Shown here piece after piece: positions 6,585 through 42,000 of a stretch of 64,000 bases of DNA. The notes beneath the pieces are model-generated. The model saw only the letters and a list, made by a program, of their open reading frames with translations. It was not told the DNA's origin and searched no databases. Position numbers and translations under genes: made by a program. Each line of letters starts with the position of its first letter. Position 1 is the stretch's first letter. Source of the stretch: Macrostomum lignano (taxonomy: Eukaryota); assembly GCA_002269645.1 (NCBI GenBank), contig NIVC01001039.1, positions 63,372-127,371 on the forward strand, in the 5' to 3' direction.

Positions 6585-7310
6585 CACTAAATTGATGTTA
6601 AAATCGCCTGCTTAGTTTAGTCAACTCAAAACCCCCTGCCTAAATTTGTATAGAACAGCTGCTGAGCTGCAATTATTCTGTTTACTCAAAACAGGCAATG
6701 TGCTACATTATTGTATGTTCGTACAGAAAAATTTACGGAATGTCTGAATAAAAACTTTAGGTAGAGCTCGGGATCTTAGCTTCATGCACATTAGAGTATT
6801 TATTGTAAGTTACATTACTTACATTGAAGTTTGTTTAGGATTAAATTCTGTACTTCGTGAACCTCTTGCTAGTTGACATTTTGTACGGTAATAAAACGGT
6901 CCTTTTAAGGCCCGTGAAGGAATTGCTATTCACAATATACTAAATCTCTAATTAATAGCTGAATTTAGGAGGGCTGGGCCCGCTGGAGGTTAAGGAAGTT
7001 AAAGTAAACATTGTCATGTCATGGTGTACGCTCATTTTTCAACGCTTCGAAGTCAATTTAATAAGGCTACTAAAAATTCAATCATGAAACAATGTGCTTG
7101 AGCTTGTGCAATATAGACTAAGGTAGACAATAATTATTTTTTCACTAGTGGCGGAGCCACTCGCTTCATGCAGCACTTTTTAATATCAATTTGGTTGATT
7201 AGCCAGGTGTTAAGACGCTGGTCTTGTCCATCGTCGAACCTTCACAACGTAGAAAACTTAGACAGCAGCCACATTCACAAGATCGAAAGGGGATGTCAAC
7301 TTAAGCACCA

Positions 7311-8503
7311 GAATGAAGCCCGAAGTTCAGCTCCGGCCCAAACCGACTGCAATCGATAACTTGTCGGCCCAGACGACTAGAATCGCCGAGACATCCCATC
7401 CGGCTCCCTTCCTTGGGGTCCCAGGGGATAAAGGGGATAAAATGGGGATCTCATGTCAACTTAAGGCTCTGGAATGGAGCCCGAAGTTCAGCTCCGGCCC
7501 AAACCGACTGCAATCGATAACTTTTCGGCCCAGACGACTAGAATCGCCGAGACATCCCATCCGGCTCCCTTCCTTGGGGTCCCAGGGGATAAAATGGGGA
7601 TCTCATGTCGACTTACGGCTCTGGAATGGAGCCCGAAGTTCAGCTCCGGCCCAAACCGACTGCAATCGATAACTTGTCGGCCCAGACGACTAGAATCGCC
7701 GAGACATCCCATCCGGCTCCCTTCCTTGGGGTCCCAGGGGATAAAGGGGATAAAATGGGGATCTCATGTCAACTTAAGGCTCTGGAATGGAGCCCGAAGT
7801 TCAGCTCCGGCCCAAACCGACTGCAATCGATAACTTTTCGGCCCAGACGACTAGAATCGCCGAGACATCCCATCCGGCTCCCTTCCTTGGGGTCCCAGGG
7901 GATAAAATGGGGATCTCATGTCGACTTAAGGCTCTGGAATGGAGCCCGAAGTTCAGCTCCGGCCCAAACCGACTGCAATCGATAACTTGTCGGCCCAGAC
8001 GACTAGAATCGCCGAGACATCCCATCCGGCTCCCTTCCTTGGGGTCCCAGGGGATAAAGGGGATAAAATGGGGATCTCATGTCAACTTAAGGCTCTGGAA
8101 TGGAGCCCGAAGTTCAGCTCCGGCCCAAACCGACTGCAATCGATAACTTTTCGGCCCAGACGACTAGAATCGCCGAGACATCCCATCCGGCTCCCTTCCT
8201 TGGGGTCCCAGGGGATAAAATGGGGATCTCATGTCGACTTAAGGCTCTGGAATGGAGCCCGAAGTTTAGCTCCGGCCCAAACCGACTGCAATCGATAACT
8301 TGTCGGCCCAGACGACTAGAATCGCCGAGACATCCCATCCGGCTCCCTTCCTTGGGGTCCCAGGGGATAAAGGGGATAAAATGGGGATCTCATGTCAACT
8401 TAAGGCTCTGGAATGGAGCCCGAAGTTCAGCTCCGGCCCAAACCGACTGCAATCGATAACTTGTCGGCCCAGACGATTAGAATCGCCGAGACATCCCATC
8501 CGG
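7311..8503. repeat. Alternating 161/152-bp tandem array (313-bp higher-order repeat) embedded in the left TIR
   Basis: Unit anchor GAATG(G/A)AGCCCG at 7311, 7472, 7624, 7785, 7937, 8098, 8250, 8411. Confidence 0.95.
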
Positions 8504-8794
8504 TTTCAAGTGATGAAGCTCTATTCAATTCGAATATCGCATTAGCGTGTGTATTTTATTTCAGCTATTATATATTGTTTGCATTGTAATATTTCCGTCG
8601 TTTATTTTTCCGGATTTTAGAGAATGTTTTCGCGGTTTTGATTTGACCACTTTTGGGCGAGAGATTTTCGATACTGTGCGTCAAGTATTTGTAGCATTAT
8701 TTTAAGTGATATATTAATGAAGTTAAGGTTTTGGTCAGTTTTTCTTTCTTAGTTTTATGACAGGTGCAGATTTGTTGCAGATTGCGTTTTATAC

Positions 8795-11746
8795 TTGCTA
8801 GTAATGTCCGATTTTACTTGCTCTCAATGTGGTCATCAATTCAGCAAAGCAGCCAATTTGAACCGACATCTCGAAACGACTAGATGTGGTCGCTGCTCAT
8901 CTGAATCGTCTGGAGCCTTCGCGCCTCCGAGAAACGCACGAGAGGCGCTTCAGTTTCTTGCGGTCGGTGGTAAGTATGTGAAAGTTTTTTTTGAACCCAA
9001 ACCTTTTTCCACGAACCGCAAATGAGAAGGAGTTCAAACGTATTTGCGGTCTTAGCTATAGTGATTTCGATAGCTTCTCAGAAATGTTACCAGAAGTATC
9101 TCGCCTTCGTATTTTGACAAAGCCGTCTCGAATATTTTTGTACCTGAAGAAGCTTCGCCAAGGTTGCAGCTTTCAATCATTAGCTTTCGATTTCAACATT
9201 TCTGCCCAAAGAGCATGCAACATTTTTTGGGAGATTGCCAAGGAGCAGTACCTACGGGATCCATATCAACCGAGGTCGATAGCGTCGACTCCGATTCAGA
9301 CTCTGCTTGAGGAAAATGTAGTACGCGATCAATTTATTCTCGGTGTATTTCACACACTACTCAAAGGCAAGAAGCTTGTTCTTCTAGTGGGTGATCATAC
9401 TTACTTTTATCTCCCTAAGAGCAGCTCACACCACACGCAAATTCGAACTTACTTTTCCGGCAAGAAAATGAATGTGAACAAAAAAATGGCGGTTGTCAAC
9501 AGTAGAGGAAAAATTATCTACACCGCTCCCCTTACCGCCGCTATCTCGCCAACAATGGGCGATGGGAATTTGACTGCAATGCAAGTTGACATGGAGGCTG
9601 AAGGACTAATAGAGCCCACTTTGTTGCGCATTCTGTGCTCTGTACAGAAAGATTATCACGTTATAGGCATTTTCGACAAAGGTTACAGCCACCAGCTTTG
9701 TTCACCAACTTCGGTTAACTTCCGCGACTTTATAGAGACTAATAGTAAAGGCTGCACGACGCTTCTATTTCCGACCAGTCCAGGTGACCGAGTTCTAAAC
9801 GAGCAGTTTGAATTTGTAAATAATGAGGCTCCTGTTGGTGACCGATCAATACCAGGAAAGCTTACATCAATCGAAGCAAATACAAGTCGCTGCGCTACGC
9901 TTTTCCGTTATCTCGTAGAATGTAGCTTTGCTGCAATCAAGCAGGACAAATGCATAAATGAGCGACAGGAGCCGTACCAATGGCTACATGCCCCAGAGTT
10001 TACCGAACGCAGCCGGCTCGATGTTGTTATTGAAAACTCCATGGCAAAATTCAACCGTTCGCATCCAGGATTTCAAGCTACAAGGAGTCTGCCGCCGTCA
10101 TGGTCAGATTGCTCCATTTTCGAATACGGACGGAACTTTGCTAAACGTCTTTTCATTGCGAATGAGCTAGACGAAATTGAGCAACTTGAGTACAATTGCG
10201 ATTTGACTCGAATACCAACGAGTTCTACCCGAAAATGGACAGCAGTGGATCCCCTGGACCCTGAAAGTTCAGGGTTCCCCAGCGTTGACGAAAGAAATCT
10301 GGAAGAGCTTAGCATCGGCCCATACCACGTTCTTCAGTCAAAACGCTACATCGAAAACGTCAGAGTTCATGAGGTACTCAGTAGCTACGCTGGAGACTCG
10401 TGGCGCGATTTCGAATTGTTGATTTCTGAACTGCCAAGCCATTTAAAATGCTGGAAGTTTCATCAGCGAGCGCCACCAAAGGGGTGGAGCAGTAAGTTTG
10501 GAGAATGGAGGCCATCTTGGATATATTTAGCCGTTCTTCATTCCCGTCATCGGTCAAAAACTTACCGAGTTGTCCTTCGTATTTGCGAAACTGCAAGCGG
10601 TAACCGATTCGGATTTCGTGACTCGGGGCTGCTGCGTCTGCATGGCTACTTTTCATCCTCAAAGGCCGGAAGCAGGACAGCAGGGTGTGACAGTCATGTT
10701 ATGGCTGTGGTTAGAATGCTAGGCTGTTATGCATATCACCCCGAAAGCTACAACATGTGCAGCAGCAGCTTCCGATTTATTGACAGTGCTTTGCCAAAAG
10801 CACTGATTGCCAATCTTTACAATGATCAATCTGGTGGTCATCCAGCTCCAAATGCACCTCGCAGAGACAGTGCTGAATCGCAGCAAGATGAACAGAGGCA
10901 CAGTTCAAATGCTACTGGTTCATTGAATTCGCCGAAGAAGTTATTTGGGTTGCCAAATAATGGCCTGCAGTGCTACGCAAATGCAGCAGTGCAATTGTTT
11001 CTCTGCCTGCATTCTAATGGATGCATTTTAAAAGAGACTAGCAACGACCAAGTCCATCGAGAGCTGCTTCGTCTTCTGACGGAGATGCAACAGCGGTCTG
11101 CAACAGTCACTCCACTGTTAACGGCAGTTCGGTTGCAACATCCAGATTCATTTCAAACAAATCAGCGCCATTGCGTCAACGAATTTGTTCAAACGCTTCT
11201 AATACATCTGGAATTTCTGTCATCAGATGCTTTCACAGAATTTTCACTCATTCAAACTTGTCGAGATTGCCAGCGCACAAGTGCTGAAGTTCCTGTTGGC
11301 ACAATCGATAACAGAGTGATTTGCATTCCTCTCTGTCAATTTGAGCGCTCAATGCAATTGTCAGTTTAGACAAAATCTTCTGCGCTTTTGTCGCTCCTCA
11401 AGTAGTGAAATGTTCGGACGCCAATTGCCTGGGCGATTGTAATCAAGAGATCGTAGTAACACCTGGAAAGTTTACCCTGATTTATCTTGATCGTGCTAGT
11501 ATGGATGGCCACCTAAAGCTTCAAACTCCTGTAAGCTTTTCTGCAAGGTCAGCGGGTGTTTCTACACTTGGTAAGCCAGTGGCCACAATATCACACCATG
11601 GAAACCGACTGAAATCGGGACATTTCACAGCAAGCGTACTGAGCTGTGTGTGGACGAGAATTGACGACATGAAAGTTACGTCAGACTATAACCCGTTCGT
11701 ACGTGAGCCTGAGTGCATCGTGCTCGTTGCACTTTTAAACTCGTAA
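8795..11746 (+). CDS. Transposase-USP fusion in three frame segments: C2H2 finger (8795-8990), HTH + DDE_Tnp_4-like + degenerate SWIM + USP Cys box (8991-11369), USP His box (about 11345-11746)
   Basis: CSQCGHQFSKAANLNRH (C2H2-like); IFLYLKKLRQGCSFQSLAFDFNIS (HTH_Tnp_4-like); catalytic GDHTY / FDKGY / LVECSF; KAGSRTAGCDSH; GLPNNGLQCYANAAVQ; HHGNRLKSGHF...WTRIDD. Joining the segments needs two single-base frameshifts. Confidence 0.8.
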
Positions 11747-12867
11747 AAGCATTTTTAGCGAAAATACAATTGTTTTAAGCGAGTGTACTGTACGTTTTGT
11801 ATTGCAGATTTTAAAGGACATGCAGATTAAGAAACAATGTCATCTCACGCATTCTTTACGTACCATAGGTTACATGTGAAGATAATTCAGACTGACATCA
11901 AATAACAAAAGCTTTGCATTAGTTCTTTCAATTTCTTTTAGACTCACAATTAGCTAAAAACTGGAAGTATTTTTTACTGAATCAAAGAACTTAAACCCAA
12001 AAACCGTTTCTTAGGACTGAGAAACTTTTGCAATTATGATTTTACTAAGCTATGCGTGAGAGGCGTTACTTTATTTGCTTAAAAACGTGTGCTGCTTTGC
12101 ATGACATGCTTTGTTTTTATTACTTTGATAACTTGTACAGCTTTGCATGACATGCTTTGTTTTTATTACTTTGATAACTTGTACAGCTTTGCATGATATG
12201 CTTTGTATCTATTACGTCATAACTTGTACAGCCTTGCGTGATATTCTTTATTTTACCAATATACATGGTTTCGGTTTATCGTCAAAAGTTCTGCTTACTA
12301 ATAACCAAATGAATTTACCAGTTAATTTTTTCAAACTGAGTTTCCAGATCGGCATTTTTAACACTGTTTCGATACGAACAAATCATTTTTATTACTTAAC
12401 AATCAATATATAATAGCTGAAATAAAATACATCCGCTAATGCGATATTCGAATTGAATAGAGCTTCGTCACTTGAAACCGGATGGGATGTCTCGGCGATT
12501 CTAGTCGTCTGGGCCGACAAGTTATCGATTTCAGTCGGTTTGGGCCGGAGCTGAACTTCGGGCTCCATTCTGGTGCTTAAGTTGACATCCCCTTTCGCAA
12601 CGCAGAAAACTACACTGCATGGTTCTTGTTACATCCTATAATCTACATTAAACCTATAAAATGATTGATTTATGATTGTAAAATTAGATAGCTGCTCGAA
12701 TTCTGAGCTGGTACCTTTGTTGCTGCAAATGATCGAACTCCGCTGGAAACTTTCCCGGCTGGCAAAGTTCGTAGACCAAATTCATATAGCGTTTTTAGTA
12801 GGGCAAATGCTTGTCATTGGTTCTGTGCTGCTTTTACCTGCCTATTTGTGGATGTACTAGCTTTCCA

Positions 12868-14340
12868 CCAGTGGGTTGATACGGGACTGATACCTGTCCA
12901 TCAGTGGGTATGCTAACTGTCCATCAGTGGGTGTGATACCTGTCCATCAGTGGGTATGCTAACTGTCCATCAGTGGGTGTGATACCTGTCCATCAGTGGG
13001 TATGCTAACTGTCCATCAGTGGGTGTGATACCTGTCCATCAGTGGGTATGCTAACTGTTCATCAGTGGGTATGCTAACTGTCCATCAGTGGGTATGCTAA
13101 CTGTCCATCAGTGGGTATGCTAACTGTCCATCAGTGGGTATGCTAACTGTCCATCAGTGGGTATGCTAACTGTTCATCAGTGGGTATGCTAACTGTTCAT
13201 CAGTGGGTATGCTAACTGTTCATCAGTGGGTATGCTAACTGTTCATCAGTGGGTATGCTACCTGTTCATCAGTGGGTATGCTGACTGTTCATCAGTGGGT
13301 ATGCTAACTGTCCATCAGTGGGTATGCTGACTGTTCATCAGTGGGTATGCTAACTGTCCATCAGTGGGTATGCTAACTGTTCATCAGTGGGTATGCTACC
13401 TGTTCATCAGTGGGTATGCTACCTGTTCATCAGTGGGTATGCTACCTGTTCATCAGTGGGTATGCTACCTGTCCATCAGTGGGTATGCTAACTGTCCATC
13501 AGTGGGTATGCTAACTGTTCATCAGTGGGTATGCTACCTGTTCATCAGTGGGTATGCTACCTGTTCATCAGTGGGTATGCTACCTGTTCATCAGTGGGTA
13601 TGCTACCTATCCATCAGTGGGTATGCTACCTGTCCATCAGTGGGTGTGATACCTGTCCATCAGTGGGTATGCTACCTGTTCATCAGTGGGTATGCTACCT
13701 GTCCATCAGTGGGTGTGGTACCTGCCCATCAGGTGTGCTACGTACCTGCCCATCAGGTGTGCTACGTACCTGCCCATCAGGTGTGCTACGTACCTGCCCA
13801 TCAGGTGTGCTACGTTACGTACCTGCCCACCAGTGGGTGTGATATCTGTTTATTAGTGGGTGTGATACCTGTCCATCAGTGGGTGTGACACCTGTCTATC
13901 AGCATGTGTGCTACCTATCTATCAGTATGTGCTACCTGTCCATCAGACTGTGTGCTACCTGTCTATCAGCGTGTGCTACCTGTCTATCAGCATGTGCTAC
14001 CTGTCTATCAGCATGTGCCACCTGTCTATCAGCATGTGCCACCTGTCTATCAGTATGTGCTACCTGTCTATCAGTATGTGCTACCTGTCTATCAGTATGT
14101 GCTACGTGTCTGTCAGTATGTGCTACCTGTTCTATCAGTATGTGCTACCTGTCCAATGTCCATCAGTGGGTGTGATACCTGTCCATCAGTATGTGCTACC
14201 TGTCCATCAGTATGTGTGTTACCTGTCCTTCAGTGGGTGTGATACCTGTCCATCAGTATGTGTGTTACCTGTCCATCAGTGGGTGTGATACCTGTCTATT
14301 AGTATGTGCTACCTGTCTATCAGTATGTGCTGCTACCTGT
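12868..14340. repeat. 23-bp minisatellite (CTGTCCATCAGTGGGTATGCTAA)n grading into 21-bp variants
   Basis: CATCAG at 13083, 13106, 13129; from about 13880 the unit becomes CTACCTGTCTATCAGCATGTG. Confidence 0.95.
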
Positions 14341-15074
14341 CCAGTAGCATGTGTGCCATTTCCAGTTGCACACAAAGTTGTTAAAAGAACAGAAACAAAG
14401 AATGGAAGGCGAAGCATTTCCGAGAATAAACTTGAAAAGAAGATATAAGCAACGGTAAAAACGCATGTTACGCATGTAATTTGCAGAAGTGGGAGGTGAT
14501 TATTAAGACAAAAAACACACAGGGGATTGCTGTAGAAAGGACAAATGCGACTTAGAATTGGTGCAAGTTGGCAAACGACAAACTGAATATAATAGTACGC
14601 ATAAAGTATTTTCTTGTAGCAAAACAATGCCAAGTGAAATATGAATATAAGCAAAAATGAAATAAGGCAGAGAATAGATAAACTGCGATACAGGCGATCA
14701 CTGTTCGCTCAGAGGCTATTGCGAGAATATAAATGGTGATAATAAATAAATCTAATTAATGCAACGGTAAACTAAATAGCAAATTTTATAGACTGGGACA
14801 TTTAAATGCTAAGATGAATAATGTTTCTATACCTCTCAGAAAGTCACTTAATATAGTATTTAATGTAAACTAAGCATTACTTCAAGCGCATTTTGCACTT
14901 TTGTTATTGTCGTAAATATTTAATATTTATCTATATTTAATAGACGCTGGCGCAGTATGGAGTTCAGTGTATGCAAAGTTTTCTAGGGCCTGGACTCTTT
15001 CAGGGGCGCTAGGAGTTTAGAGTATTTATTAAAATTGAAAAAGCAGATGCGAACTTGAATCACAAGCCAGAGAG

Positions 15075-24660: not shown

Positions 24661-25579
24661 TTAGCTAGAGACAATTTTGCTTGTCCAATTTCCCAAGAAT
24701 TTCACTAAATCCTCTATAGCGTCGCTCCACTTTTACCAATCCTCTTCAAATTGGACACAATCAATTTTCAACTATTTTGACACAATCGTATAAAGTTTAG
24801 AGTCTCGAAGTTAATTCTGAACGGTACTGTGTACTTTTAAAGTTAGTCTGCTTTTCGTAAGCGAGACAGCCACCCCAACCTCCGCCTCTCTCTCCTTCCT
24901 GGCCACTGGACAGATGTGTGTGAAAGGCCGTTTAAAATTAACTAACTTTCATGCAGCTGGCATTAAGTTTGCTCCACGTACAGCGATTGACTTCAAACTT
25001 GATACAATTCTTCATTGACTCATTATCTAGCTAAATATACATGTAGTCTCAACTTTGTACCTCAATTAGGACAGAAACTGTAGGCAAGTGAAGTTTGTCT
25101 GCTTTTTCTGTTGTGCCTCTCATCGGACTCATCCAGCTCATTCCCCCAGAGCAAGGATCAGGTGATAGGGCTTAATGTACATAGCAAATGTACAGTGCAT
25201 GTTTTGGAATAACTTTATTAGAGTATTCTGTCCCCCACAATGACAGACTTTCCAAGCACTTGAACTGATGCTGATGCTTTTAGTTATAAAATATTTGGGA
25301 TTTTTTACCCACTTCGATCTCTGAATTTTTTAGCCAAAACCACGCATTACCATTGCCAGAAAACAAGCAATCTTTTGACACCGGTTGCAACAAGTTCGGT
25401 CAGCATATTTTCTTTATATCTGGGTCACGTGTACATGTACACGCATGTATAGCTGCGAACGAAAAACTGAGTTTAAAGATCGTAATGTGTTACGTACTTT
25501 TTAGTAAGTGACGTGCGCAAGAATTTTAATTGAAGTAACCTGGATGCGAAACTCTAACTGAGGCACCAATATCTGATTT

Positions 25580-26293
25580 CTTGGTGGGCGCCCCTGTCTC
25601 TTGATGGGCGCCCCTGTCTCTTGATGGGCGCCCCTGTCTATTTGGTGGACGCCCCTGTCTATTTGGTGGGCGCCCCCGTCTCTTGGTGGGTGCCCCTGTC
25701 TCTTGGTAGGCGCCCCCGTCTCTTGGTGGGCGCCCCTGTCTCTTGGTGGGCGCCTCCGTCTCTTGGTAGGCGCCACTGTCTCTTGGTAGGCGCCACTGTC
25801 TCTTGGTAGGCGCTCCTGTCTCTTGGTGGGCGCCCCCGTCTCTTGGTGGGCGCTCCTGTCTCTTGGTGGGCGCTCCTGTCTCTTGGTGGGCGCCCCTGTC
25901 TCTTGGTGGACGCCCCTGTCTCTTGGTGGGCGCCCCCGTCTCTTGGTGGGTGCCCCTGTCTCTTGGTGGGTGCCCCTGTCTCTTGGTAGGCGCCCCCGTC
26001 TCTTGGTGGGCGCCCCTGTCTCTTGGTGGGCGCCACTGTCTCTTGGTGGGCGCCCCCCTGTCTCTTGGTAGGCGCCCCTGTCTCTTGGTGGGCGCCCCTG
26101 TCTCTTGATGGCGCCCTGTCTCTTGGTGGACGCCCCTGTCTCTTGGTGGACGCCCCTGTCTCTTGGTGGGCGCCCCTGTCTCTTGGTAGGCGCCACTGTC
26201 TCTTGGTGGGCGCCCCTGTCTCTTGGTAGGCGCCACTGTCTCTTGGTAGGCGCCACTGTCTCTTGGTAGGCGCCACTGTCTCTTGGTAGGCGT
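25580..26293. repeat. 20-bp minisatellite (GCGCCCCTGTCTCTTGGTGG)n
   Basis: Direct tandem copies. Confidence 0.95.
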
Positions 26294-26866
26294 CCCTCTG
26301 CGTGCGCCGCCGCGCTCACTAGAACACAATGGTTGTTCCACTCTAGATTCCAAGCTAGAACTGCTAAACGATCAGCAGAGTAGAAGAGCTGAGTCATGAT
26401 TGGCTGTCCAATTCCTTTCATAGAAAACTGCAGCAGGCGTGCAGAAACAAGTGCGGACATGTGGGCGGAATTGATGCAGCCGGCTCAATAATCAAGTAAA
26501 AATGCAGCCGCTCATTCCTCGCCCATGATCTGGCCCATGGCAACCGGTCCATCTGCATTGTCTTGTCTCGTTTTATGCCGAAGCAAATTTAAATTTGGAA
26601 ATTTCTCTCCCAGCTCTTTTCGTTACCCGCCTGCTGCATGCTTTTACTATAGGAAACAATTCTTTTGTTGTTTGTTTTGTAAAAAGCTGCAATCATGTCG
26701 ACATCGACGCCGTCACCCACTCCGAGCACTTCGCTGACCATGCGGCAGATCCAGCAGGCCACTCAGTGAGTGCCGGTCTTTTTGCGAACACTGTGCAATG
26801 CACCTGTGCCATTTCCATTTCTTGTTGCTATGCTGTTTTTTTACGCTCCGTAGCTGCTCAAATACC

Positions 26867-27565
26867 AATGTGCTGCTCACACACCAGTGTAGCTGCTCAC
26901 ACACCAGTGTAGCTGCTCACACAGCAGTGTAGCTGCTCACACAGCAGTGTAGCTGCTCACACAGCAGTGTAGCTGCTCACACAGCAGTGTAGCTGCTCAC
27001 ACAGCAGTGTAGCTGCTCACACACCCCCCAATGTAGCTGCTCACACACCAGTGTAGCTGCTCACACACCAGTGTAGCTGCTCACACAGCAGTGTAGCTGC
27101 TCACACAGCAGTGTAGCTGCTCACACACCAATGTAGCTGCTCACACACCAATGTAGCTGCTCACACACCACTGTAGCTGCTCACACACCACTGTAGCTGC
27201 TCACACAGCAGTGTAGCTGCTCACACACCACTGTAGCTGCTCACACACCAGTGTAGCTGCTCACACAGCAGTGTAGCTGCTCACACACCACTGTAGCTGC
27301 TCACACACCAGTGTAGCTGCTCACACACCAGTGTAGCTGCTCACACAGCAGTGTAGCTGCTCACACACCAATGTAGCTGCTCACACACCAGTGTAGCTGC
27401 TCACACACCAGTGTAGCTGCTCACACACCAGTGTAGCTGCTCACACACCAGTGTAGCTGCTCACACACCAATGTAGCTGCTCACACACCAGTGTAGCTGC
27501 TCACACACCAGTGTAGCTGCTCACACACCAGTGTAGCTGCTCACACACCAGTGTAGCTGCTCTCA
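26867..27565. repeat. 20-bp minisatellite (CACACACCAGTGTAGCTGCT)n
   Basis: Direct tandem copies. Confidence 0.95.
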
Positions 27566-28079
27566 CCTGTGCCATTGCAGTATTGTATATATTATAAAAG
27601 TATTTCTATATGTTGAAATTTTGAGCAAATGTCGAAACCATTGAGAAGACTATTTGCTTTGAGACTGAATCACAATGGGGGGCTCAGACTCATGGCAGAT
27701 TGTATTATCTTTTGGCCTACAAAATCAGACAAAGAGAATACATTTTTCCTGAGCATATGGTTCCGACAGTTGAATATGCTCTCTTTGCAGCTTCACATTT
27801 TTTGCACACGCGAAGGCTCAGTTCCGCCGTTTGCAGCTATGAATAAACGAGGCTGAGAAGGACAATAGAAATTGAATACAGAATGCAGGACTACACAGGT
27901 AGCTGCGTATTAGGAACATTGACATGGAGGTTGTAGAGAGACAAAGTGGAGTTCAACAGGAAGAGATTGGGAGTGAATGAGAAAATGAGAATAGAGATAA
28001 GGGAGTCGTAATATGGAGAAGAGAGATGGAACTGAGAATAGATATAAGTGAGCTGAGAAATGGAGAAGAGAAATGAAGA

Positions 28080-36000: not shown

Positions 36001-39000
36001 TCTGACCTGTACCATTCCTCAGGGGTCTGACCTGTGCCATTCCTCAGGGGTCTGACCTGTGCCACTTCAGCAGACTCAGGGAACTTCATCTCATCAACTA
36101 ATTTGATTTTGCAGATTCTGGCGAGTGGCCGCCAGCGCTGAAGTCATCGCCGAGTTGGCGGAGCTGCTCCGCCAGCTGGACTCTGTGCGCTGTCTGTCGC
36201 TCGAAGCAAATGGTCACGTGACTGACGAGAACTATGCCGACCTGATTCGGGTGGACAGCAAGTGAGTGCAGGAGCTCGGCTTTTCTGATTGCAGGTTTAG
36301 GATTTCTGATTGCATATTTGGGATTTCTGATTGCATATTTGGGATTTCTGATTGCATATTTGAAATTTCTAATTGCATATTTGAGATTTCTGATTTGCAT
36401 ATTTGAGATTTCTGATTGCAGATTTAGGATTTCTGATTGCAGATTTGGGATTTCTGATTGCATATTTGGGATCTGATTGCAGATTTGGGATCTGATTGCA
36501 GATTTGGGATTTCTGATAGCAGATTTGGGATTTCTGATTGCATATTTGGGATCTGATTGCAGATTTGGGAACTGATTGCAGATTTGGGATCTGATTGCAG
36601 ATTTGGGATTTCTGATGGAAGATTTGGGATTTCTGATGGAAGATTTGGGATCTGATTGCAGATTTGGTATTTCTAATTGCAGATTTGGGATTTCTGATTG
36701 CATATTTGGGATTTCTGATTGCATATTTGGGATCTGATTACAGATTTGGGATTTCTGATGGAAGATTTGGGATCTGATTGCAGATTTGGGATTTCTGATG
36801 GAAGATTTGGGATTTCTGATGGAAGATTTGGGATCTGATTGCAGATTTGGGATTTCTAATTGCAGATTTAGGATTTCTGATTGCATATTTGGGATTTTTG
36901 ATTGCATATTTGGGATCTGATTACAGATTTGGGATTTCTGATGGAAGATTTGGGATCTGATTGCAGATTTGGGATTTCTGATGGAAGATTTGGGATTTCT
37001 TATTGCAGATTTGGGATTTCTGTTTGCAGATTTGCAATCATTGCAACCCTCCCTGTGATCATTGCAACCCTCCCTGTGATCATTGCAAACCTCCCTGTGA
37101 TCATTGCAAACCTCCCTGTGATCATTGCAAACCTCCCTGTGATCATTGCAAACCTCCCTGTGATCATTGCAAACCTCCCTGTGATCATTGCAAACCTCCC
37201 TGTGATCATTGCAAACCTCCCTGTGATCATTGCAACCCTCCCTGTGATCATTGCAAATCTCCCTGTGATCATTGCAAACCTCCCTGTGATCATTGCAACC
37301 CTTCTGCTAACAGCTAACAAGTTTATGATTTATAGCTCCTATACTTGAACATACAATGCTGATGATCGTTTTGATATACGAGAATTTTCTATAGCAATGC
37401 ATCTCCATCCTCGTCCAGCCTCACCAAGCTGCAGCTCCGCTTCAACCAGATCACGGATGCTGGTGCAGCGAGAATTAGCGAGCAGCTCAGCGGACTGCGC
37501 GACCCGCCATCGAAGCTGGTGTCGCTGGACCTGTCCTCCAACTGCGTGCAGGACGGCGGGGCCACGGCTCTGGCTCAGGTCTGCAGCTTTGCAACCCTTT
37601 TGAGATCATTTGCAACCCTCTATGAGATCATTGCAACCCTTCTGGGATCATTGCAGCCCTCCCTGTGATCAGTACAACCCTCCCTGTGAACAGTAAAACC
37701 CAGCTCCCTGTGATCATTACAACCCTCCCTGTGAACAGTACAACCCTCCCTGTGAACAGTACAACCCTCCCTGTGATCAGTAAAACCCTCCCTGTGATCA
37801 GTAAAACCCTCCCTGTGATCAGTAAAACCCTCCCTGTGATCAGTACAACCCTCCCTGTGAACAGTACAACCCTCCCTGTGATCAGTAAAACCCTCCCTGT
37901 GATCAGTACAACCCTCCCTGTGATCAGTAAAACCCTCCCTGTGATCAGTACAACCCTCCCTGTGATCAGTAAAACCCTCCCTGTGATCAGTAAAACCCTC
38001 CCTGTGATCAGTAAAACCCTCCCTGTGATCAGTACAACCCTCCCTGTGATCAGTAAAACCCTCCCTGTGATCAGTACAACCCTCCCTGTGATCAGTACAA
38101 CCCTCCCTGTGAACAGTACAACCCTCCCTGTGAACAGTACAACCCTCCCTGTGAACAGTAAAACCCTCCCTGTGACCAGTACAACCCTCCCTGTGATCAG
38201 TACAACCCTCCCTGTGAACAGTACAACCCTCCCTGTGATCAGTAAAACCCTCCCTGTGACCAGTACAGTAAAACCCTCCCTGTGATCAGTAAAACCCTCC
38301 CTGTGATCAGTAAAACCCTCCCTGTGATCAGTAAAACCCTCCCTGTGATCAGTACAACCCTCCCTGTGAACAGTACAACCCTCCCTGTGATCAGTAAAAC
38401 CCTCCCTGTGATCAGTACAACCCTCCCTGTGATCAGTAAAACCCTCCCTGTGATCAGTACAACCCTCCCTGTGATCAGTAAAACCCTCCCTGTGATCAGT
38501 AAAACCCTCCCTGTGATCAGTAAAACCCTCCCTGTGATCAGTACAACCCTCCCTGTGATCAGTAAAACCCTCCCTGTGATCAGTACAACCCTCCCTGTGA
38601 TCAGTACAACCCTCCCTGTGAACAGTACAACCCTCCCTGTGAACAGTACAACCCTCCCTGTGAACAGTAAAACCCTCCCTGTGACCAGTACAACCCTCCC
38701 TGTGATCAGTACAACCCTCCCTGTGAACAGTACAACCCTCCCTGTGATCAGTAAAACCCTCCCTGTGACCAGTACAACCCTTTTTAAACAGTAAAACCCT
38801 CCCTGTGATCAGTAAAACCCTCCCTGTGATCAGCACAACCCTCCCTGTGATCAGCACAACCCTCCCTGTGATCAGCACAACCCTCCCTGTGATCAGTACA
38901 ACCCTCCCTGTGAACACTACAACCCTCCCTGTGATCAGTACAACCCTCCCTGTGAACAGTACAACCCTCCCTGTGATCAGTACAACCCTCCCTGTGATCA

Positions 39001-42000
39001 GTACAACCCTCCCTGTGATCAGTACAACCCTCCCTGTGAACAGTACAACCCTCCCTGTGATCAGTACAACCCTCCCTTATGATCATTGGACTCCCATTCA
39101 GCCACTGAAATCTCATTTTACAGAGCTACGTAAAAGCATTTCCTGGCTGCCCAATGCTTGCATGCAAAGCCAATACAAACAATGGCATCCCTCTTGACAG
39201 GCTCTGCGCACCAACCGCACCCTGATCCACCTGTCGCTGAGCAACAATCGCGTGTCAGACCGGGGCGCCACCGCCCTCGCCGAGTCCTGCTCCAGGTTCT
39301 ACCTGACGCACGAGGAGACTGTCGAACGCCGCAGGCTTCTGTCAACCGCAGCGGAGAGACGCACAGGACTCAGCGTGAGTGACTTGAGCAGCGGTGACGC
39401 GAGCCAGTTCACCGCTTCGCATGCCACCCTGCTCACTCAGTCAGTTTTCTCTGGAAGCACCGCCACCCGATTAGTGAGTTATTTGAGCCGTGCCAATATC
39501 GCTGCGAGTTCGATCGCTGCAAAGCAGACTTTAACGACGCAACTCTCCCCCTCACTCACACTCGAAAATTTGTTAAAACGCATCGTTTTAAGTCGGCCGA
39601 GGTGAGGCTGTCGAACCAGAGGCGCCAGTTCAGTGTTCTATGTGTATTTTATGTCTCCTTATGTACATGTACATTGTAAACTGCTATTCTAAACTTGAGT
39701 TCTAACTGGCTAAACTGAACTCTTCACTTTTTTATCTTCTCCACGATTCGAACAATATCTGCATTTTCACTGTTTTCTTATTTACGGTTAACCATCCGGT
39801 TGGTTTTATGGCCTTCATAAACACAACTCCAGGGTCCAATAAGCTGCCCTCGTCCAGGACTAATAAGCTACCCTCTCCAGGGTCCAATAATTATCTACCC
39901 TGATCCAGGGTCCAATAAGCTACTCTCATCCAGGGTCCAATAAGCTACCCTCATCCAGGATCCAATAAGCTACCCTCATCCAGGGTTCAATAAGTTACCC
40001 TTATCCAGGGTCCAATAGGCTACCCTCATCCGGGGTCCAATAAGCTACTCTTATCCAGGATCCAATAAGCTACTCTTATCCAGGGTCCAATAAGCTACTC
40101 TCATCCAGGGTCCAATAAGCTACTCTTATCCAGAGTCCAATAAGCTGCCCTCATCCAGGGTCCAATAGGCTACCTTCATCCAGGGTCCAATAAGCTACTC
40201 TTATCCAGGGTCCAATAAGCTACTCATCCAGGGTCCAATAAGCTGCCCTCATCCAGGGTCCAATAAGCTACCCCCATCCAGGGTCCAATAAGCTACTCTT
40301 ATCCAGGGTCCAATAAGCTGCCCTCATCCAGAGTCCAATAAGCTACCCTGATCCAGGGTCCAATAAGCTACTCTCATCCAGAGTCCAATAAGCTACCCTC
40401 ATCCAGGGTCCAATAAGCTACCCCCATCCAGGGTCCTATAAGCTACCCTCATCCAGGGTACAATAAGTTACTCTTATCCAGGATCCAATAAGCTACTCTT
40501 ATCCGGGGTCCAATAAGCTACCCTCATCCAGGGTCCAATAAGCTACCCTCATCCAGGGTCCAATAAGCGACCCTAATCCAGGGTCCGAAAAGCCGGCATT
40601 ATCCAGGATCCAATAAGCTACGAAGTACCCTCCCTCATCCAGGGTTCAATAAGCTACCCTCATCCAGGGTCCAATAATTAAGCTACCCTCTTCCAAAGAC
40701 AAAAAGTGCTCAGACGCTCCCGTCCTCCAGGGTTCCAATCATGGACCGCAAGAGCTAGCAGAGGTTGAGTTAAAAAACATTTACACGAGTATAACCGAAT
40801 TTTAATTTTGGCACACGTTATTTGTTCGATTTTCTATGCCTGCAACAGCTAACAATTAGCAATTGTCTGTTTCAATTTCTATTTTAATCTCTTTACAGGT
40901 ACATGAAGTGATTGATTTTTCTTAAATTTCTTGCAGCCAGAAAGCTGTCAGAGTCGGCCCTCGTCATCAGCAGTGACGGTCAGTAGCGCAACCAGAAATT
41001 TTTCAAGGGGGGGGGCGGATTCTGAGGGTAAAGTCACGGGAGGGGGGGCGGCGGAGGGGTGGCTCTGTTTTTGGCGAAAATTCGCTTGGTCCCCCTTTGA
41101 TTTTTTTTCGGTCCCCCGCCTAAGGGGGGGCGACCGCCCCCCCCCCCCGCCCCCCCCTGGTTGCGCCACTGGTGACGGTAGCTATAATTTAGTACAATAT
41201 AATAACATGACAGTGGCGCCCTGTTTTGTTGCTTAACTATCTGCTTGAGGAACTATAGACATAATTCATTTTTAAGTTGCAATACAGTTTCTGTTGCATT
41301 TTAATTGCTATAAATGCTAATTGATAAATAATTATTTGTTTTTAACACACTTGCTAATATGCATTTGCGATGAAAATAAGCCTAATTTGTTTTGTATTTA
41401 ATTTTAGTTTGAAACTATAAAAAAGTAGAGTAAACAATTCAGTTAGCAACTATAATAGCGCAGCAAAGAAGAGTACATAAGCATTTTATAAAAATAAAGC
41501 CAGCTAAAATGACTTCGATAAGTTTAGAAGCCCAAGCTTGCAGGCGTAAACAATTTGCTAATTGGTTCAGCAATAATGTACATTAGCCAGTCCACTGAAA
41601 TGTACATGGCAGCTTTGGGCTGGAATTCCGAGAAAGGCAATAAAAATTGGTGCGGAGCGGGTCGGCGGCGGGGGGGGGGGTAGTGTGGAAAGGCGCGGTT
41701 GGAGTGTTTAAGCGGGAGCACGAGAATTTCCTACAGGATGTTTTTCCGCCTAGGTTTCCCCCGCGAGATTTTCCCGCAGCGAGGAAAACCTCAGCGGGAA
41801 AACTTCTTGCTGGAAAATGTCATAGACCCGTTTAAGCTTGGGGGTAAGAGCCAATGAGCCTCGGCCTTTTGCCTTCTTAATTGCTCTTGCAGACTAAAAC
41901 TTTACATCTGTTTGTGAACATAATTCTTTTAATTTGAGAGTAATTACGAGATTAATGAGAAAACAAATTACTTTAACAAAAGTTCATTGCGTCCTGGATT

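What the first reader, a model, noticed from the sequence alone, without database searches (positions are those of the whole stretch)
7289..12592. Spy/PHIS-like transposon whose transposase is fused to an apparently active ubiquitin-specific protease
Seen: ~190-bp TIRs with GGGG/CCCC ends, no TSD, and a palindromic empty site cgAAA|TTTcg. The reading frame runs C2H2 finger, HTH, DDE (GDHTY/FDKGY/VECSF), SWIM-like, then a USP-type domain. That domain has a Cys box (GLPNNGLQCYANAAVQ), a Q..EF motif (QRHCVNEF), Zn-ribbon pairs (CRDC, CSDANC) and a His box (HHGNRLKSGHF...WTRIDD), so Cys, His and Asp are all present. Established: insertion at AAA|TTT without a TSD is the hallmark of Spy elements (PHIS group). 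Proteases carried by transposons are usually Ulp1/SENP (e.g. Zisupton, some MULE) or OTU (Helitron, Ginger). I do not know of a C19/USP domain fused to a PHIS transposase. Inference: the element may encode its own deubiquitinase to stabilise the transposase, or to strip ubiquitin marks (H2AK119ub, H3ub for DNMT1 recruitment) that silence or block target chromatin.
Basis: partly seen in the sequence, partly recalled or inferred. Interest (0 to 1): 0.88.

Follow-up and report, generated by a model that had tools for sequence, protein, structure and literature searches.

The report
Cut-and-paste transposon carrying a deubiquitinase
A 5.3-kb DNA transposon that sits in AAA|TTT without duplicating its target encodes a transposase fused to a ubiquitin-specific protease, an arrangement also found in distant relatives and not described in any paper I could search.

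Summary
Window 7289-12592 is a DNA transposon. Its terminal inverted repeats are 98% identical at the outer ends, and the right arm is about 203 bp. The ends read GGGG.../...CCCC and the flanks read AAA|TTT with no direct repeat.

One gene (8804-11746) encodes about 980 aa in this order: a C-x2-C-x12-H-x5-C finger, HTH_Tnp_4, a DDE core (D197/D291/E372), a degenerate SWIM-like motif and a USP (Peptidase C19) domain. The frame-corrected USP domain scores 44 bits against Pfam UCH (cut-off 23.9). Its predicted fold matches only USPs, and Cys723, His940 and Asp954/955 are present.

The fusion is not a one-off. Three distant relatives (955-1119 aa, 22-24% identical) carry it in single intact ORFs. 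A 51%-identical family carries it too.

Four qualifications apply:
- This copy has two 1-bp frameshifts, one inside the USP.
- The transposase belongs to a PHIS lineage with D(~93)D(~80)E spacing, not the published Spy spacing.
- The AAA|TTT behaviour rests on one full copy plus one related left end.
- What the deubiquitinase does is inference only.

No searchable paper describes a USP in a PHIS element. Repbase and Dfam could not be checked.

The parts
7286..7288 (.). Left half of the target site (AAA), host DNA directly next to the element
   Evidence: Sequence. The palindromic flank cgAAA|TTTcg is picked up as a 5-nt extension of inverted repeat I2.
7289..7403 (+). Left outer terminal inverted repeat, starting GGGGATGTCAACTTAAG
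   Evidence: 113/115 identical to the reverse complement of 12478-12592. The terminal 17-mer occurs only at the two ends of the element.
7293..8503 (+). Array of 8 tandem units (alternating 152 and 161 bp). Each unit is a copy of the outer repeat plus a spacer and carries an internal copy of the terminal motif (GGGGATCTCATGTCAACTTAAGG)
   Evidence: Tandem Repeats Finder gives period 161 x 7.7 copies and period 313 x 3.9 copies at 98%. Unit starts are 7293, 7453, 7605, 7766, 7918, 8079, 8231 and 8392.
8411..8591 (+). Last array unit running on into the inner part of the left terminal repeat
   Evidence: 181 nt, 94% complementary to 12390-12570.
8804..11746 (+). Single transposase-USP gene, about 980 codons after correcting two 1-bp frameshifts. 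ATG at 8804, TAA at 11744-11746
   Evidence: ORFs 8795-9025, 8991-11369 and 11405-11746. Frame analysis. The colinear uninterrupted homologue P0001 shows that the first break is a mutation and not an intron.
8813..8878 (+). N-terminal zinc finger, C-x2-C-x12-H-x5-C (C2H2-like)
   Evidence: Pfam zf-C2H2 E=4e-5, 24.3 bits against a cut-off of 25.2. The same spacing is seen in P0001 and in ORF1 of L011.
8985..8992 (+). Frameshift 1: a T8 homopolymer with one T too many relative to the open frame
   Evidence: P0001 reads straight through the same position (...KVRQFLNPNLFP...).
9114..9230 (+). Helix-turn-helix of PIF/Harbinger-type transposases (HTH_Tnp_4), aa 104-142
   Evidence: Pfam HTH_Tnp_4 at 23.8-24.2 bits, below the cut-off of 27. 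29 of 72 homologues match this family.
9393..9920 (+). DDE catalytic core: D197 (9393-9395), D253, D291 (9675-9677), R368 and E372 (9918-9920). Spacing is D(93)D(80)E
   Evidence: D197, D253, D291, R368 and E372 are at least 90% conserved in 72 homologues. 44 of 72 homologues hit Pfam DDE_Tnp_4. Spacing.
10449..10736 (+). C-terminal transposase region containing a degenerate SWIM-type motif (GYFSSSKAGSRTAGCDSHV at 10644-10700)
   Evidence: The family motif C..C..G.R..GCC.H was found in 66 sequences (the window protein plus 65 homologues). The window copy and L001 have lost the first two Cys. There is no Pfam SWIM hit.
10941..11743 (+). USP (Peptidase C19) domain: Cys box with C723 (10971-10973), QRHCVNEF, zinc-ribbon pairs CRDC (11259) and CSDANC (11411), His box with H940 (11621-11623), D954/D955 (11663-11668)
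   Evidence: Pfam UCH 44.3 bits, E=2e-11. PDB profile search gives USP2 at E=1.6e-19. The AlphaFold model (pLDDT 71) matches only USPs in Foldseek. The triad is conserved in six domains.
11345..11366 (+). Frameshift 2: a 1-bp loss inside the USP domain, between the first zinc-ribbon pair and the second
   Evidence: Frame 0 ends at the TAG at 11367-11369. The USP continues in the next frame from 11345. Joining the frames raises the UCH score from 23.8 to 44.3 bits.
12094..12254 (+). Subterminal 46-bp tandem repeat (3.5 copies) in the non-coding 3' part of the element
12390..12592 (-). Right terminal inverted repeat (about 203 bp), ending ...CTTAAGTTGACATCCCC
12593..12595 (.). Right half of the target site (TTT), host DNA
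   Evidence: Sequence.

Best explanation
WHAT IT IS (shown). This is a recently inactivated autonomous copy of a cut-and-paste DNA transposon of the PHIS superfamily (PIF/Harbinger-ISL2EU-Spy). It sits between AAA and TTT without a target-site duplication, as Spy elements do. Its transposase belongs to a separate, deep lineage that I call 'group A'. Group A has D(~93)D(~80)E spacing and a C-terminal SWIM-type motif. In several branches of group A the same polypeptide ends in a complete ubiquitin-specific protease domain.

HOW IT MOST LIKELY WORKS (inferred).
1. The N-terminal finger and HTH bind the terminal repeats. The left arm offers 8 repeated copies of the binding region.
2. The DDE core excises the element and re-inserts it at AAATTT.
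3. The tethered USP acts as a deubiquitinase wherever the transposase sits.
4. The most likely job is removing ubiquitin from the transposase itself or from proteins at the donor or target site. This would protect the transposition complex from ubiquitin-dependent degradation, extraction or silencing.

This would be the same strategy as the OTU and VTD deubiquitinases of Helitrons. It also parallels the Ulp1 proteases of MULE and Ginger elements and of a related PHIS transposase found here (P0109).
For: ELEMENT. Terminal repeats, unique terminal 17-mer and AAA|TTT flanks. The related family L001 has the same terminal motif, G(A/G)GGATGTCAACTTA, directly after AAA.

SUPERFAMILY. Of 72 homologues, 44 hit DDE_Tnp_4 and 29 hit HTH_Tnp_4. 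The group-A members P0006 and P0007 pass the DDE_Tnp_4 cut-off. D197, D291 and E372 are at least 90% conserved.

USP IDENTITY..

FUSION IS OLD AND KEPT.
- Intact single ORFs of 955-1119 aa carry transposase plus UCH in P0009, P0024 and P0044. P0044 is seen on 14-19 contigs from Tara Oceans and other samples.
- The L001/P0014 family shares the architecture.
- USP-bearing members fall in at least three separate branches of a neighbour-joining tree.

CATALYTIC COMPETENCE. The His-box residues (H223, G225, G231, H232 in domain numbering) and D247 are invariant in all six domains. The catalytic Cys is present in all five domains that cover it. dN/dS in the P0009 family is 0.42-0.47 for the USP and 0.16 for the transposase.

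PRECEDENT. Active VTD deubiquitinases and OTU domains occur in Helitrons, and their authors propose that they protect transposition proteins from the proteasome (PMC9741609). Ulp1 and OTU occur in Ginger (PMC2836005). P0109 is a PHIS transposase with a C-terminal Peptidase_C48 domain.
Against: - This copy cannot make the full protein as sequenced, because of two frameshifts, one of them in the USP.
- The no-duplication AAA|TTT behaviour rests on one complete copy and one left end. No empty site was found.
- The window protein itself does not reach the Pfam DDE_Tnp_4 threshold.
- The published Spy spacing D(79-80)D(44-62)E and the terminal motif GGANNNNG are not matched.
- Selection on the USP is weaker than on the transposase. 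In the one testable pair it is only marginally different from neutral, with 16.5 synonymous against 31.5 non-synonymous differences.
- Close relatives P0003 and P0005 do without a USP, so it is not essential to this kind of transposase.
- The His-box part of the AlphaFold model has low confidence.
- Nothing here identifies the substrate. It could be ubiquitin or a ubiquitin-like protein.
Confidence: 0.55

Rival explanations
1. The USP serves mainly as a ubiquitin-recognition or targeting module. It tethers the transposase to ubiquitinated chromatin such as H2A or H2B ubiquitin marks and so steers excision or integration. Catalysis would be secondary.
For: The fingers zinc ribbon is kept: CRDC and CSDANC in the window, with equivalents in P0009 and P0014. 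USP21 bound to an H2AK119ub nucleosome and USP7 bound to a nucleosome are among the structural matches, so nucleosome engagement by such cores is possible.
Against: Cys, His and Asp are all retained across very divergent members. A pure binding module would not need that. The structural matches are generic to all USPs, so they carry no specific signal.
Confidence: 0.15
2. The domain acts on a ubiquitin-like modifier (ISG15, FUBI, NEDD8 or similar) rather than on ubiquitin, or acts as a processing protease.
For: The best Foldseek matches are USP18, which is ISG15-specific. USP36 bound to Fubi is also in the list. The core is small, about 265 aa, like USP18 and USP2.
Against: The ranking differences among USPs are marginal (E 7e-10 to 4e-7, TM about 0.5). 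The sequence profile prefers USP2, USP15 and USP12. No ubiquitin-like domain was detected by Pfam in the protein, and by inspection it has no conserved Gly-Gly cleavage site: the 'AVGG' at aa 53-56 is not conserved in P0001.
Confidence: 0.1
3. The USP is a passenger: a host gene fragment captured by the transposon that is decaying neutrally and plays no part in transposition.
For: This copy has a frameshift in the USP. The USP evolves faster than the transposase: 34% against 51% identity to the nearest family, and dN/dS 0.42-0.47 against 0.16. Some relatives lack it.
Against: It sits at the same position and in frame in at least four families whose transposases are only 22-51% identical. These have intact 955-1119 aa ORFs and a complete catalytic triad. 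Transposon USPs resemble each other more than they resemble the best PDB USP: the window domain scores 27-30 bits against P0044 and P0024, but 16 bits against USP12.
Confidence: 0.07
4. The element is not Spy-like in its integration chemistry. AAA and TTT would be the outermost bases of the terminal repeats, or the palindromic flank would be a coincidence, and the real target and duplication would differ.
For: There is only one complete copy. The inverted repeat does extend 5 nt into the 'flank', and AAA also precedes the L001 end. So AAA could belong to the element.
Against: If cgAAA/TTTcg belonged to the repeats, the next bases out (..agat | caac..) still show no duplication. L001 shares AAA but not the 'cg'. 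AAA|TTT without duplication is exactly the documented Spy behaviour, and Spy is the sister group of ISL2EU within the same superfamily (PMC4122938).
Confidence: 0.1

Closest known systems
Spy transposons (PHIS superfamily; e.g. Spy-6_BMo of Bombyx mori, cgSpy of Colletes gigas)
   Same: Insertion between AAA and TTT with no target-site duplication. Terminal repeats of variable, sometimes long, length. A single ORF. An N-terminal HTH followed by a DDE_Tnp_4-type core (PMC4122938 and PMC11304231).
   Different: - Spacing is D(93)D(80)E, against the published D(79-80)D(44-62)E.
- The terminus reads GGGGATGT..., not GGANNNNG.
- The protein is about 980 aa, against about 500-700 aa.
- It has an N-terminal zinc finger, which most Spy transposases are said to lack.
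- It carries a C-terminal USP domain that no Spy or PHIS paper mentions.

Weaker homologues found here, which I call 'group B', do have the Spy-type spacing D(79-80)D(47-53)E and form a separate clade.
ISL2EU transposons (PHIS superfamily)
   Same: The published sister group of Spy. Terminal repeats begin with GG. The target is A/T-palindromic (A|AT|T). The transposase is long and has a zinc-finger N-terminus (PMC4482050).
   Different: ISL2EU makes a 2-bp AT duplication, has a THAP finger and carries a second ORF with a YqaJ exonuclease. None of these is present here.
Helitrons and Helentrons carrying OTU or VTD deubiquitinase domains
   Same: The deubiquitinase is built into the transposition protein of a DNA transposon. 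VTD domains were shown to be active, and their authors propose that they protect transposition proteins from proteasomal degradation (PMC9741609).
   Different: The transposition mechanism differs (rolling-circle RepHel rather than DDE cut-and-paste). The protease class also differs (OTU or VTD rather than USP/C19).
Ulp1 (Peptidase C48) proteases in Ginger1, some MULEs and Zisupton, and in the PHIS relative P0109
   Same: A papain-fold protease of the ubiquitin/ubiquitin-like system is carried by, or fused to, a DDE transposase. P0109 shows DDE_Tnp_4, a SWIM motif and a C-terminal Peptidase_C48 domain in the same superfamily (PMC2836005).
   Different: C48 enzymes are SUMO/Ubl-type proteases with a different fold family from C19 USPs. 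The USP and C48 fusions lie in different clades of the transposase tree, so they are independent acquisitions.
Cellular minimal USP cores (USP2, USP18, USP12/46, USP21)
   Same: The fold has thumb, palm and fingers. The Cys box, QxxxxEF, two CxxC-type pairs, His box and Asp are all present. Profile search gives E=1.6e-19 to USP2, and Foldseek gives E=7e-10 to USP18.
   Different: Identity is only about 15-20%. The domain is very compact, about 265 aa. It is fused to a transposase instead of to cellular targeting domains. No particular cellular USP stands out as the donor.

Membership tests
Spy group of PHIS transposons | Insertion precisely between 5'-AAA and TTT-3' with no target-site duplication | tested here: met
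   Flanks are cgAAA|GGGG...CCCC|TTTcg, with no direct repeat of any length. The related L001 left end also follows AAA. This rests on one full copy only, and no empty site was available.
Spy group of PHIS transposons | Transposase with D(79-80)D(44-62)E spacing (PMC4122938) | tested here: not met
   The window protein and P0001 have D(93)D(80)E. The whole close group has D(92-96)D(74-102)E. Weaker homologues have the Spy-type D(79-80)D(47-53)E.
Spy group of PHIS transposons | HTH motif at the N-terminus of the transposase | tested here: met
   HTH_Tnp_4 covers aa 104-142 at 23.8-24.2 bits, just under the Pfam cut-off of 27. 29 of 72 homologues match it.
Spy group of PHIS transposons | Terminal consensus 5'-GGANNNNG-3' | tested here: not met
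   The terminus is GGGGATGTCAAC in the window and GAGGATGTCAAC in L001. GGA appears only from nt 3, and the 8th base of that register is A.
Spy group of PHIS transposons | Groups with reference Spy transposases in a phylogeny, apart from ISL2EU, Harbinger and IS5 | not testable with these tools
   No Repbase or Spy reference protein sequences were available. The papers' supplements hold none.
PHIS superfamily (DDE_Tnp_4 / IS5-like transposases) | Homology to the DDE_Tnp_4 catalytic domain and the HTH_Tnp_4 domain | tested here: met
   Met through intermediates. The window protein misses the DDE_Tnp_4 threshold. Its homologues P0006 and P0007, aligned to it over roughly 480-600 aa, pass it. 44 of 72 homologues match.
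PHIS superfamily (DDE_Tnp_4 / IS5-like transposases) | Signature D(19-29)K(29)D(18-40)D(11-19)P(18-28)R(3)E | tested here: inconclusive
   D197, D253(37)D291 and R368(3)E372 fit, and these residues are at least 90% conserved. The segment between the second catalytic D and R is about 40 aa longer than the published range, and the K spacing is off by 2-4 residues.
ISL2EU | 2-bp AT duplication in A|AT|T, a THAP domain on the transposase, and a second ORF with a YqaJ exonuclease | tested here: not met
   The flanks are AAA/TTT. There is no THAP hit. No second ORF of 60 aa or more lies outside the transposase frame and repeat arrays.
PIF/Harbinger | 3-bp TWA duplication and a second ORF encoding a Myb/SANT protein | tested here: not met
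   No TWA direct repeat at the ends. Single coding region only.
Ubiquitin-specific proteases (Peptidase C19, Pfam UCH PF00443) | Match to the family profile above the curated threshold, over the whole domain | tested here: met
   44.3 bits against a cut-off of 23.9, covering profile positions 2-237 of 254, after correcting one frameshift. The uncorrected N-terminal half alone scores 23.8 bits.
Ubiquitin-specific proteases (Peptidase C19, Pfam UCH PF00443) | Cys box with the catalytic Cys, His box with the catalytic His, and Asp/Asn as the third residue | tested here: met
   C723 lies in GLPNNGLQCYANAAVQ, H940 in SGHF, and D954/955 in WTRIDDMKV. These are conserved in all comparable transposon-borne USP domains.
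Ubiquitin-specific proteases (Peptidase C19, Pfam UCH PF00443) | USP fold | tested here: met
   The AlphaFold model has pLDDT 71 and pTM 0.74. All 50 top PDB matches are USP catalytic domains, with TM about 0.5. The His-box region is modelled with low confidence.
Ubiquitin-specific proteases (Peptidase C19, Pfam UCH PF00443) | Isopeptidase activity on ubiquitin conjugates | not testable with these tools
   Needs a biochemical assay.
SWIM zinc finger | CxCxnCxH metal-binding signature | tested here: not met
   The window has GYFSSSKAGSRTAGCDSHV, so the first two Cys and one of the CC pair are lost. 57 of 66 motif-bearing sequences keep the full C..C..G.R..G.C.H pattern. There is no Pfam SWIM hit.

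The most novel reading that the evidence does not exclude
Group A is a deep, undescribed clade of PHIS transposons. It would be marked by D(~93)D(~80)E spacing, a SWIM-type motif and AAA|TTT insertion without duplication. In this clade an active USP-class deubiquitinase would be an integral, ancestrally acquired part of the transposase. That would make it the first USP dedicated to DNA transposition. It would also imply that hosts control cut-and-paste transposases through ubiquitination, and that the element carries its own countermeasure.
Probability: 0.35. Interest if true: 0.75.

Novelty: new variant of a known kind. Interest (0 to 1): 0.62.

Why it matters
Transposons are known to carry proteases of the ubiquitin system: OTU and VTD in Helitrons, and Ulp1 in MULE, Ginger and Zisupton. 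What these proteases do for the element is largely unknown. I found no report of a USP, the largest class of cellular deubiquitinases, in a cut-and-paste element.

Here the deubiquitinase sits on the same polypeptide as the transposase. Intact natural versions of 955-1119 aa exist. The nearest characterised relatives, the Spy elements, already work in human-cell transposition assays (PMC11304231). The question 'does a transposon need to remove ubiquitin in order to move?' therefore becomes directly testable by comparing wild-type, Cys-to-Ala and USP-deleted transposases.

The finding also widens the PHIS superfamily. It adds a lineage that shares Spy's unusual duplication-free integration but has a differently spaced catalytic core. 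It further shows that PHIS transposases acquired ubiquitin-family proteases at least twice, C19 here and C48 in P0109.

Tried and rejected
1. INTRON AT THE SECOND FRAME BREAK. The only frame-restoring GT...AG candidates start at a poor GTCAAT site, and they would delete conserved USP sequence. A 1-bp loss fits better. The first break lies in a T8 run, and P0001 reads through it, so it is a frameshift and not an intron.

2. MORE COPIES OR EMPTY SITES. The window holds no second copy and no paralogous flank. A scan of metagenome contigs with back-translated peptide patterns gave 196 pattern matches, none confirmed by tblastn (two earlier attempts failed for lack of conserved columns). A scan with the terminal 14-mer GNGGATGTCAACTTA gave 120 loci, all chance matches, with no blastn or tblastn similarity to the element.

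3. ELEMENT ENDS IN RELATIVES' CONTIGS. No convincing terminal repeats were found in L002-L013, L134-L138.
- The Tara contigs for P0044 are colinear to their ends, so they seem to be one locus seen in many samples.
- L012 lies wholly within L011.
- L138 starts and ends inside its own terminal repeat.
- A 10-nt inverted match in L013 extends outward, not inward, and I dismissed it.

4. PROTEIN SEARCH WITH THE USP-DOMAIN ALIGNMENT. The word-indexed search returned nothing. The same search with the whole-family alignment added only P0002 and P0016. No donor cellular USP could be named.

5. REFERENCE SPY SEQUENCES. None are held in the papers' supplements, so a direct phylogenetic placement against Spy and ISL2EU was not possible.

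6. ONE-OFF HOST GENE CAPTURE. Considered and rejected because the fusion recurs in distant relatives.

7. DOMESTICATED HOST GENE. Rejected for the window copy, because its terminal repeats are 98% identical and it carries frameshifts. It is not excluded for the P0044 locus.

Full report
1. THE OBSERVATION

Window 7289-12592 is bounded by inverted repeats. Arms 7284-7403 and 12478-12597 are 98% complementary over 120 nt. Arms 8411-8591 and 12390-12570 are 94% complementary over 181 nt. Inside the element, 113 of the outer 115 nt are identical between the two ends. The 17-mer GGGGATGTCAACTTAAG occurs exactly twice in the 64-kb window, at the two ends and inverted.

The right repeat is about 203 bp (12390-12592). 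The outer ~115 bp plus a 37-46 bp spacer has been amplified into eight tandem units (7293-8503, alternating 152 and 161 bp). Only the last unit runs on into the inner part of the repeat. Each internal unit keeps a slightly altered copy of the terminal motif.

The host bases next to the ends are AAA on the left and TTT on the right. The palindrome extends to cgAAA|TTTcg. No direct repeat of any length abuts the ends. On base composition I estimate AAA/TTT flanks at roughly one in a thousand by chance. The window holds no second copy and no empty site.

2. THE GENE

Three ORFs on the + strand (8795-9025, 8991-11369, 11405-11746) form one gene broken by two single-base frameshifts.

- The first break lies in a T8 run at 8985-8992.
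- The homologue P0001 reads straight through this point, so it is a mutation or sequencing error and not an intron.
- The second break lies between 11345 and 11366.
- The only frame-restoring intron candidates there use a poor donor site and would delete conserved sequence.

The corrected protein has 980 aa.

3. DOMAINS, FROM N- TO C-TERMINUS

- Aa 4-25: a zinc finger with spacing C-x2-C-x12-H-x5-C. It scores just under the Pfam zf-C2H2 cut-off. The spacing is conserved in P0001 and in relatives' upstream ORFs.
- Aa 104-142: HTH_Tnp_4 at 24 bits against a cut-off of 27.
- A DDE core with D197 (GDHTY), D291 (FDKGY) and E372 (VECSF). These residues, plus D253 and R368, are at least 90% conserved across 72 homologues.
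- Around aa 614-632: a SWIM-type motif. Across the family it reads C..C..G.R..GCC.H, found in 66 sequences. This copy and L001 have lost the first two cysteines.
- Aa 713-980: a USP domain.

4. THE USP DOMAIN IS REAL AND COMPLETE

- Without frame correction only its N-terminal half is seen, at 23.8 bits against a cut-off of 23.9.
- After joining the frames, Pfam UCH scores 44.3 bits (E=2e-11) over profile positions 2-237 of 254.
- A profile built from six transposon-borne USP domains hits 104 PDB sequences at E up to 0.01, led by human USP2 (E=1.6e-19). USP15, USP12, USP21 and USP18 score around E=1e-15 to 1e-16.
- An AlphaFold model (pLDDT 71, pTM 0.74; the His-box region has low confidence) matches only USP catalytic domains among its 50 best Foldseek hits: USP18, USP2, USP47, USP21, USP35 and others.
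- The Cys box (C723), QRHCVNEF, both zinc-ribbon pairs, the His box (H940) and D954/955 are present.
- The catalytic residues are conserved in every comparable domain, even though these domains share only about 17-34% identity.

5. THE FUSION RECURS IN RELATIVES

An exhaustive HMMER search of 1.84 billion representative proteins gave 126 hits. Several carry the same fusion.

- P0009 (1048 aa), P0024 (955 aa) and P0044 (1119 aa) are single intact ORFs. The transposase is followed by UCH above threshold.
- P0009 and P0044 come from clusters of 20 near-identical members in ENA and Tara Oceans assemblies.
- The closest family is P0001 on contig L001, 51-53% identical. L001 breaks off exactly where the USP begins.
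- The fragment P0014 overlaps the L001 end at 88% identity over 75 aa and continues into a full USP domain.
- L001 also shows the same terminal motif, GAGGATGTCAACTTA, directly after AAA.

USP-bearing members fall in at least three separate branches of a crude neighbour-joining tree. The families of P0003 and P0005 end after the SWIM motif and have no USP downstream.

The transposon USP domains resemble each other more than they resemble the best PDB USP. The window domain scores 27-30 bits against P0044 and P0024, but 16 bits against USP12. P0009 is too divergent to judge. A single old acquisition with later losses is the simplest reading, but repeated capture is not excluded.

Within the P0009 family, dN/dS is 0.16 for the transposase and 0.42-0.47 for the USP. 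The USP is constrained, but more weakly.

6. CLASSIFICATION

Of 72 longer homologues, 44 hit Pfam DDE_Tnp_4 and 29 hit HTH_Tnp_4. The close relatives P0006 and P0007 are among them. The element therefore belongs to the PIF/Harbinger-ISL2EU-Spy (PHIS) superfamily.

The homologues split into two groups by catalytic spacing.

- Group A is the close group. It includes the window element, with D(93)D(80)E, and spans D(92-96)D(74-102)E.
- Group B is the weaker group. It has D(77-86)D(44-53)E, mostly D(79-80)D(47-53)E.

The Spy paper gives D(79-80)D(44-62)E (PMC4122938), which matches group B. Both groups share the C-terminal SWIM-type motif.

Measured against the published Spy definition:

- The element meets the target-site criterion, the single ORF and the N-terminal HTH.
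- It fails the spacing and the GGANNNNG terminal motif.
- It has none of the ISL2EU features (AT duplication, THAP, YqaJ ORF).
- It has none of the Harbinger features (TWA duplication, Myb ORF).

I therefore call it Spy-like in integration behaviour and a member of a distinct PHIS lineage by its transposase.

7. HOW IT PROBABLY WORKS

Shown: a DDE transposase of the PHIS type is covalently linked to a USP domain whose catalytic residues are kept across deep divergence.

Inferred: the USP removes ubiquitin at the place where the transposase acts. The most plausible targets are the transposase itself or proteins at the donor or target site. This would counter ubiquitin-dependent degradation or silencing.

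The inference leans on three precedents:

- Active VTD deubiquitinases and OTU domains occur in Helitrons, where the same role has been proposed (PMC9741609).
- Ulp1 and OTU domains occur in Ginger elements (PMC2836005).
- P0109, found here, is a group-B PHIS transposase with a C-terminal Ulp1 (Peptidase_C48) domain. It shows that this superfamily recruited a ubiquitin-family protease a second, independent time.

Rival readings are a ubiquitin-binding targeting module, specificity for a ubiquitin-like modifier, or a neutral passenger. They are scored in the report sections. No computation here can separate the first two.

8. STATE OF THIS COPY

The terminal repeats are 98% identical and the frame is open apart from two single-base shifts, so the copy is young. 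As sequenced it cannot produce the full protein, and one shift truncates the USP. Both shifts could be assembly errors, and one lies in a homopolymer. Only other copies can tell.

9. NOVELTY

The three Spy/PHIS papers never mention ubiquitin, protease, UCH or USP. Six full-text searches combined transposon terms with USP, deubiquitinase, UCH, Ulp1 and OTU. They found no description of a C19 domain in a cut-and-paste element (and reads 60, 61, 77). Repbase and Dfam could not be searched, so prior cataloguing cannot be excluded.

I rate it a new variant of a known kind: a known transposon superfamily and a known strategy (a transposon-borne deubiquitinase), but a new protease class and a transposase lineage that appears undescribed.

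10. SOURCE ORGANISM

It is unknown but eukaryotic. The window is packed with minisatellites and has a PDZ-domain ORF. The only named relative is a UniRef protein of the flatworm Macrostomum lignano, which contains a 50-57% identical transposase fragment. Most relatives come from marine plankton metagenomes.

Noticed in passing
window 7293-8503: The left arm carries eight tandem copies of the outer terminal-repeat segment (alternating 152 and 161 bp, 92-98% alike). Each copy has an internal terminal-like motif, GGGGATCTCATGTCAACTTAAGG. The right arm has one copy. This could be a stack of extra transposase-binding sites or a product of unequal exchange.
   Followed up: partly
window 12094-12254: A 46-bp tandem repeat (3.5 copies, 89% matches) lies in the non-coding 3' part of the element, just inside the right terminal repeat.
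   Followed up: no
window 1-64000 (e.g. 717-1407, 2049-2755, 12891-14343, 25579-26297, 26850-27566, 36282-37034, 37613-39085, 39828-40621, 57821-58392): The window is unusually rich in minisatellites with 15-50 bp units. Tandem Repeats Finder gives 44 rows at score 200 or more, with arrays up to 1.5 kb. Most long 'ORFs' in the window lie inside these arrays. The region looks gene-poor and repeat-dense.
   Followed up: no
window 51618-52073 (+): This ORF encodes a PDZ domain (Pfam PDZ, E=3e-16). It is probably an exon of a host gene, and it is the only clear host coding sequence I saw.
   Followed up: no
L011:202-1944 and L012:115-1893 (upstream of the P0009-family transposase-USP gene); L002:1568-2932: Relatives have a second ORF (454-592 aa) on the same strand, ending about 60 bp (P0009 family) or about 430 bp (P0044 family) upstream of the transposase-USP ORF. 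In the P0009 family it has the same C-x2-C-x12-H-x5-C fingers and long acidic low-complexity tracts. Its N-terminal ~180 aa are homologous to the N-terminal extension that is fused to the transposase in P0003, P0004, P0005 and P0007. The P0044-family ORF1 shows no detectable similarity to it.
   Followed up: partly
P0109 (930 aa): A related PHIS transposase with Spy-type spacing D(86)D(44)E carries a C-terminal Ulp1 protease domain (Peptidase_C48, E=7e-10) after DDE_Tnp_4 and the SWIM motif. This is a second, independent fusion of a ubiquitin-family protease in this superfamily. Two of 72 homologues hit C48.
   Followed up: partly
L002-L009 (Tara Oceans and other ENA contigs carrying P0044): All eight contigs are 99.4-99.9% identical and stay colinear to their ends, apart from length variation in a GGGATT-type minisatellite downstream. 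This looks like one locus of an abundant planktonic eukaryote seen in many samples, not many transposon copies. The intact 1119-aa transposase-USP gene there could be a single-copy or even a domesticated gene.
   Followed up: partly
P0016 and P0010: P0016 is a UniRef protein of Macrostomum lignano named 'DUF3480 domain-containing protein'. It contains a 50-57% identical piece of this transposase. P0010 (2393 aa, with THAP and PRP4 hits) contains a 55% identical piece. Both look like gene models that have swallowed transposon fragments.
   Followed up: no
L003:1-245 and L004:1-60: These contigs begin with a perfect 55-60 nt hairpin-like inverted copy of nearby sequence. This is probably an assembly artefact at a foldback.
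   Followed up: no
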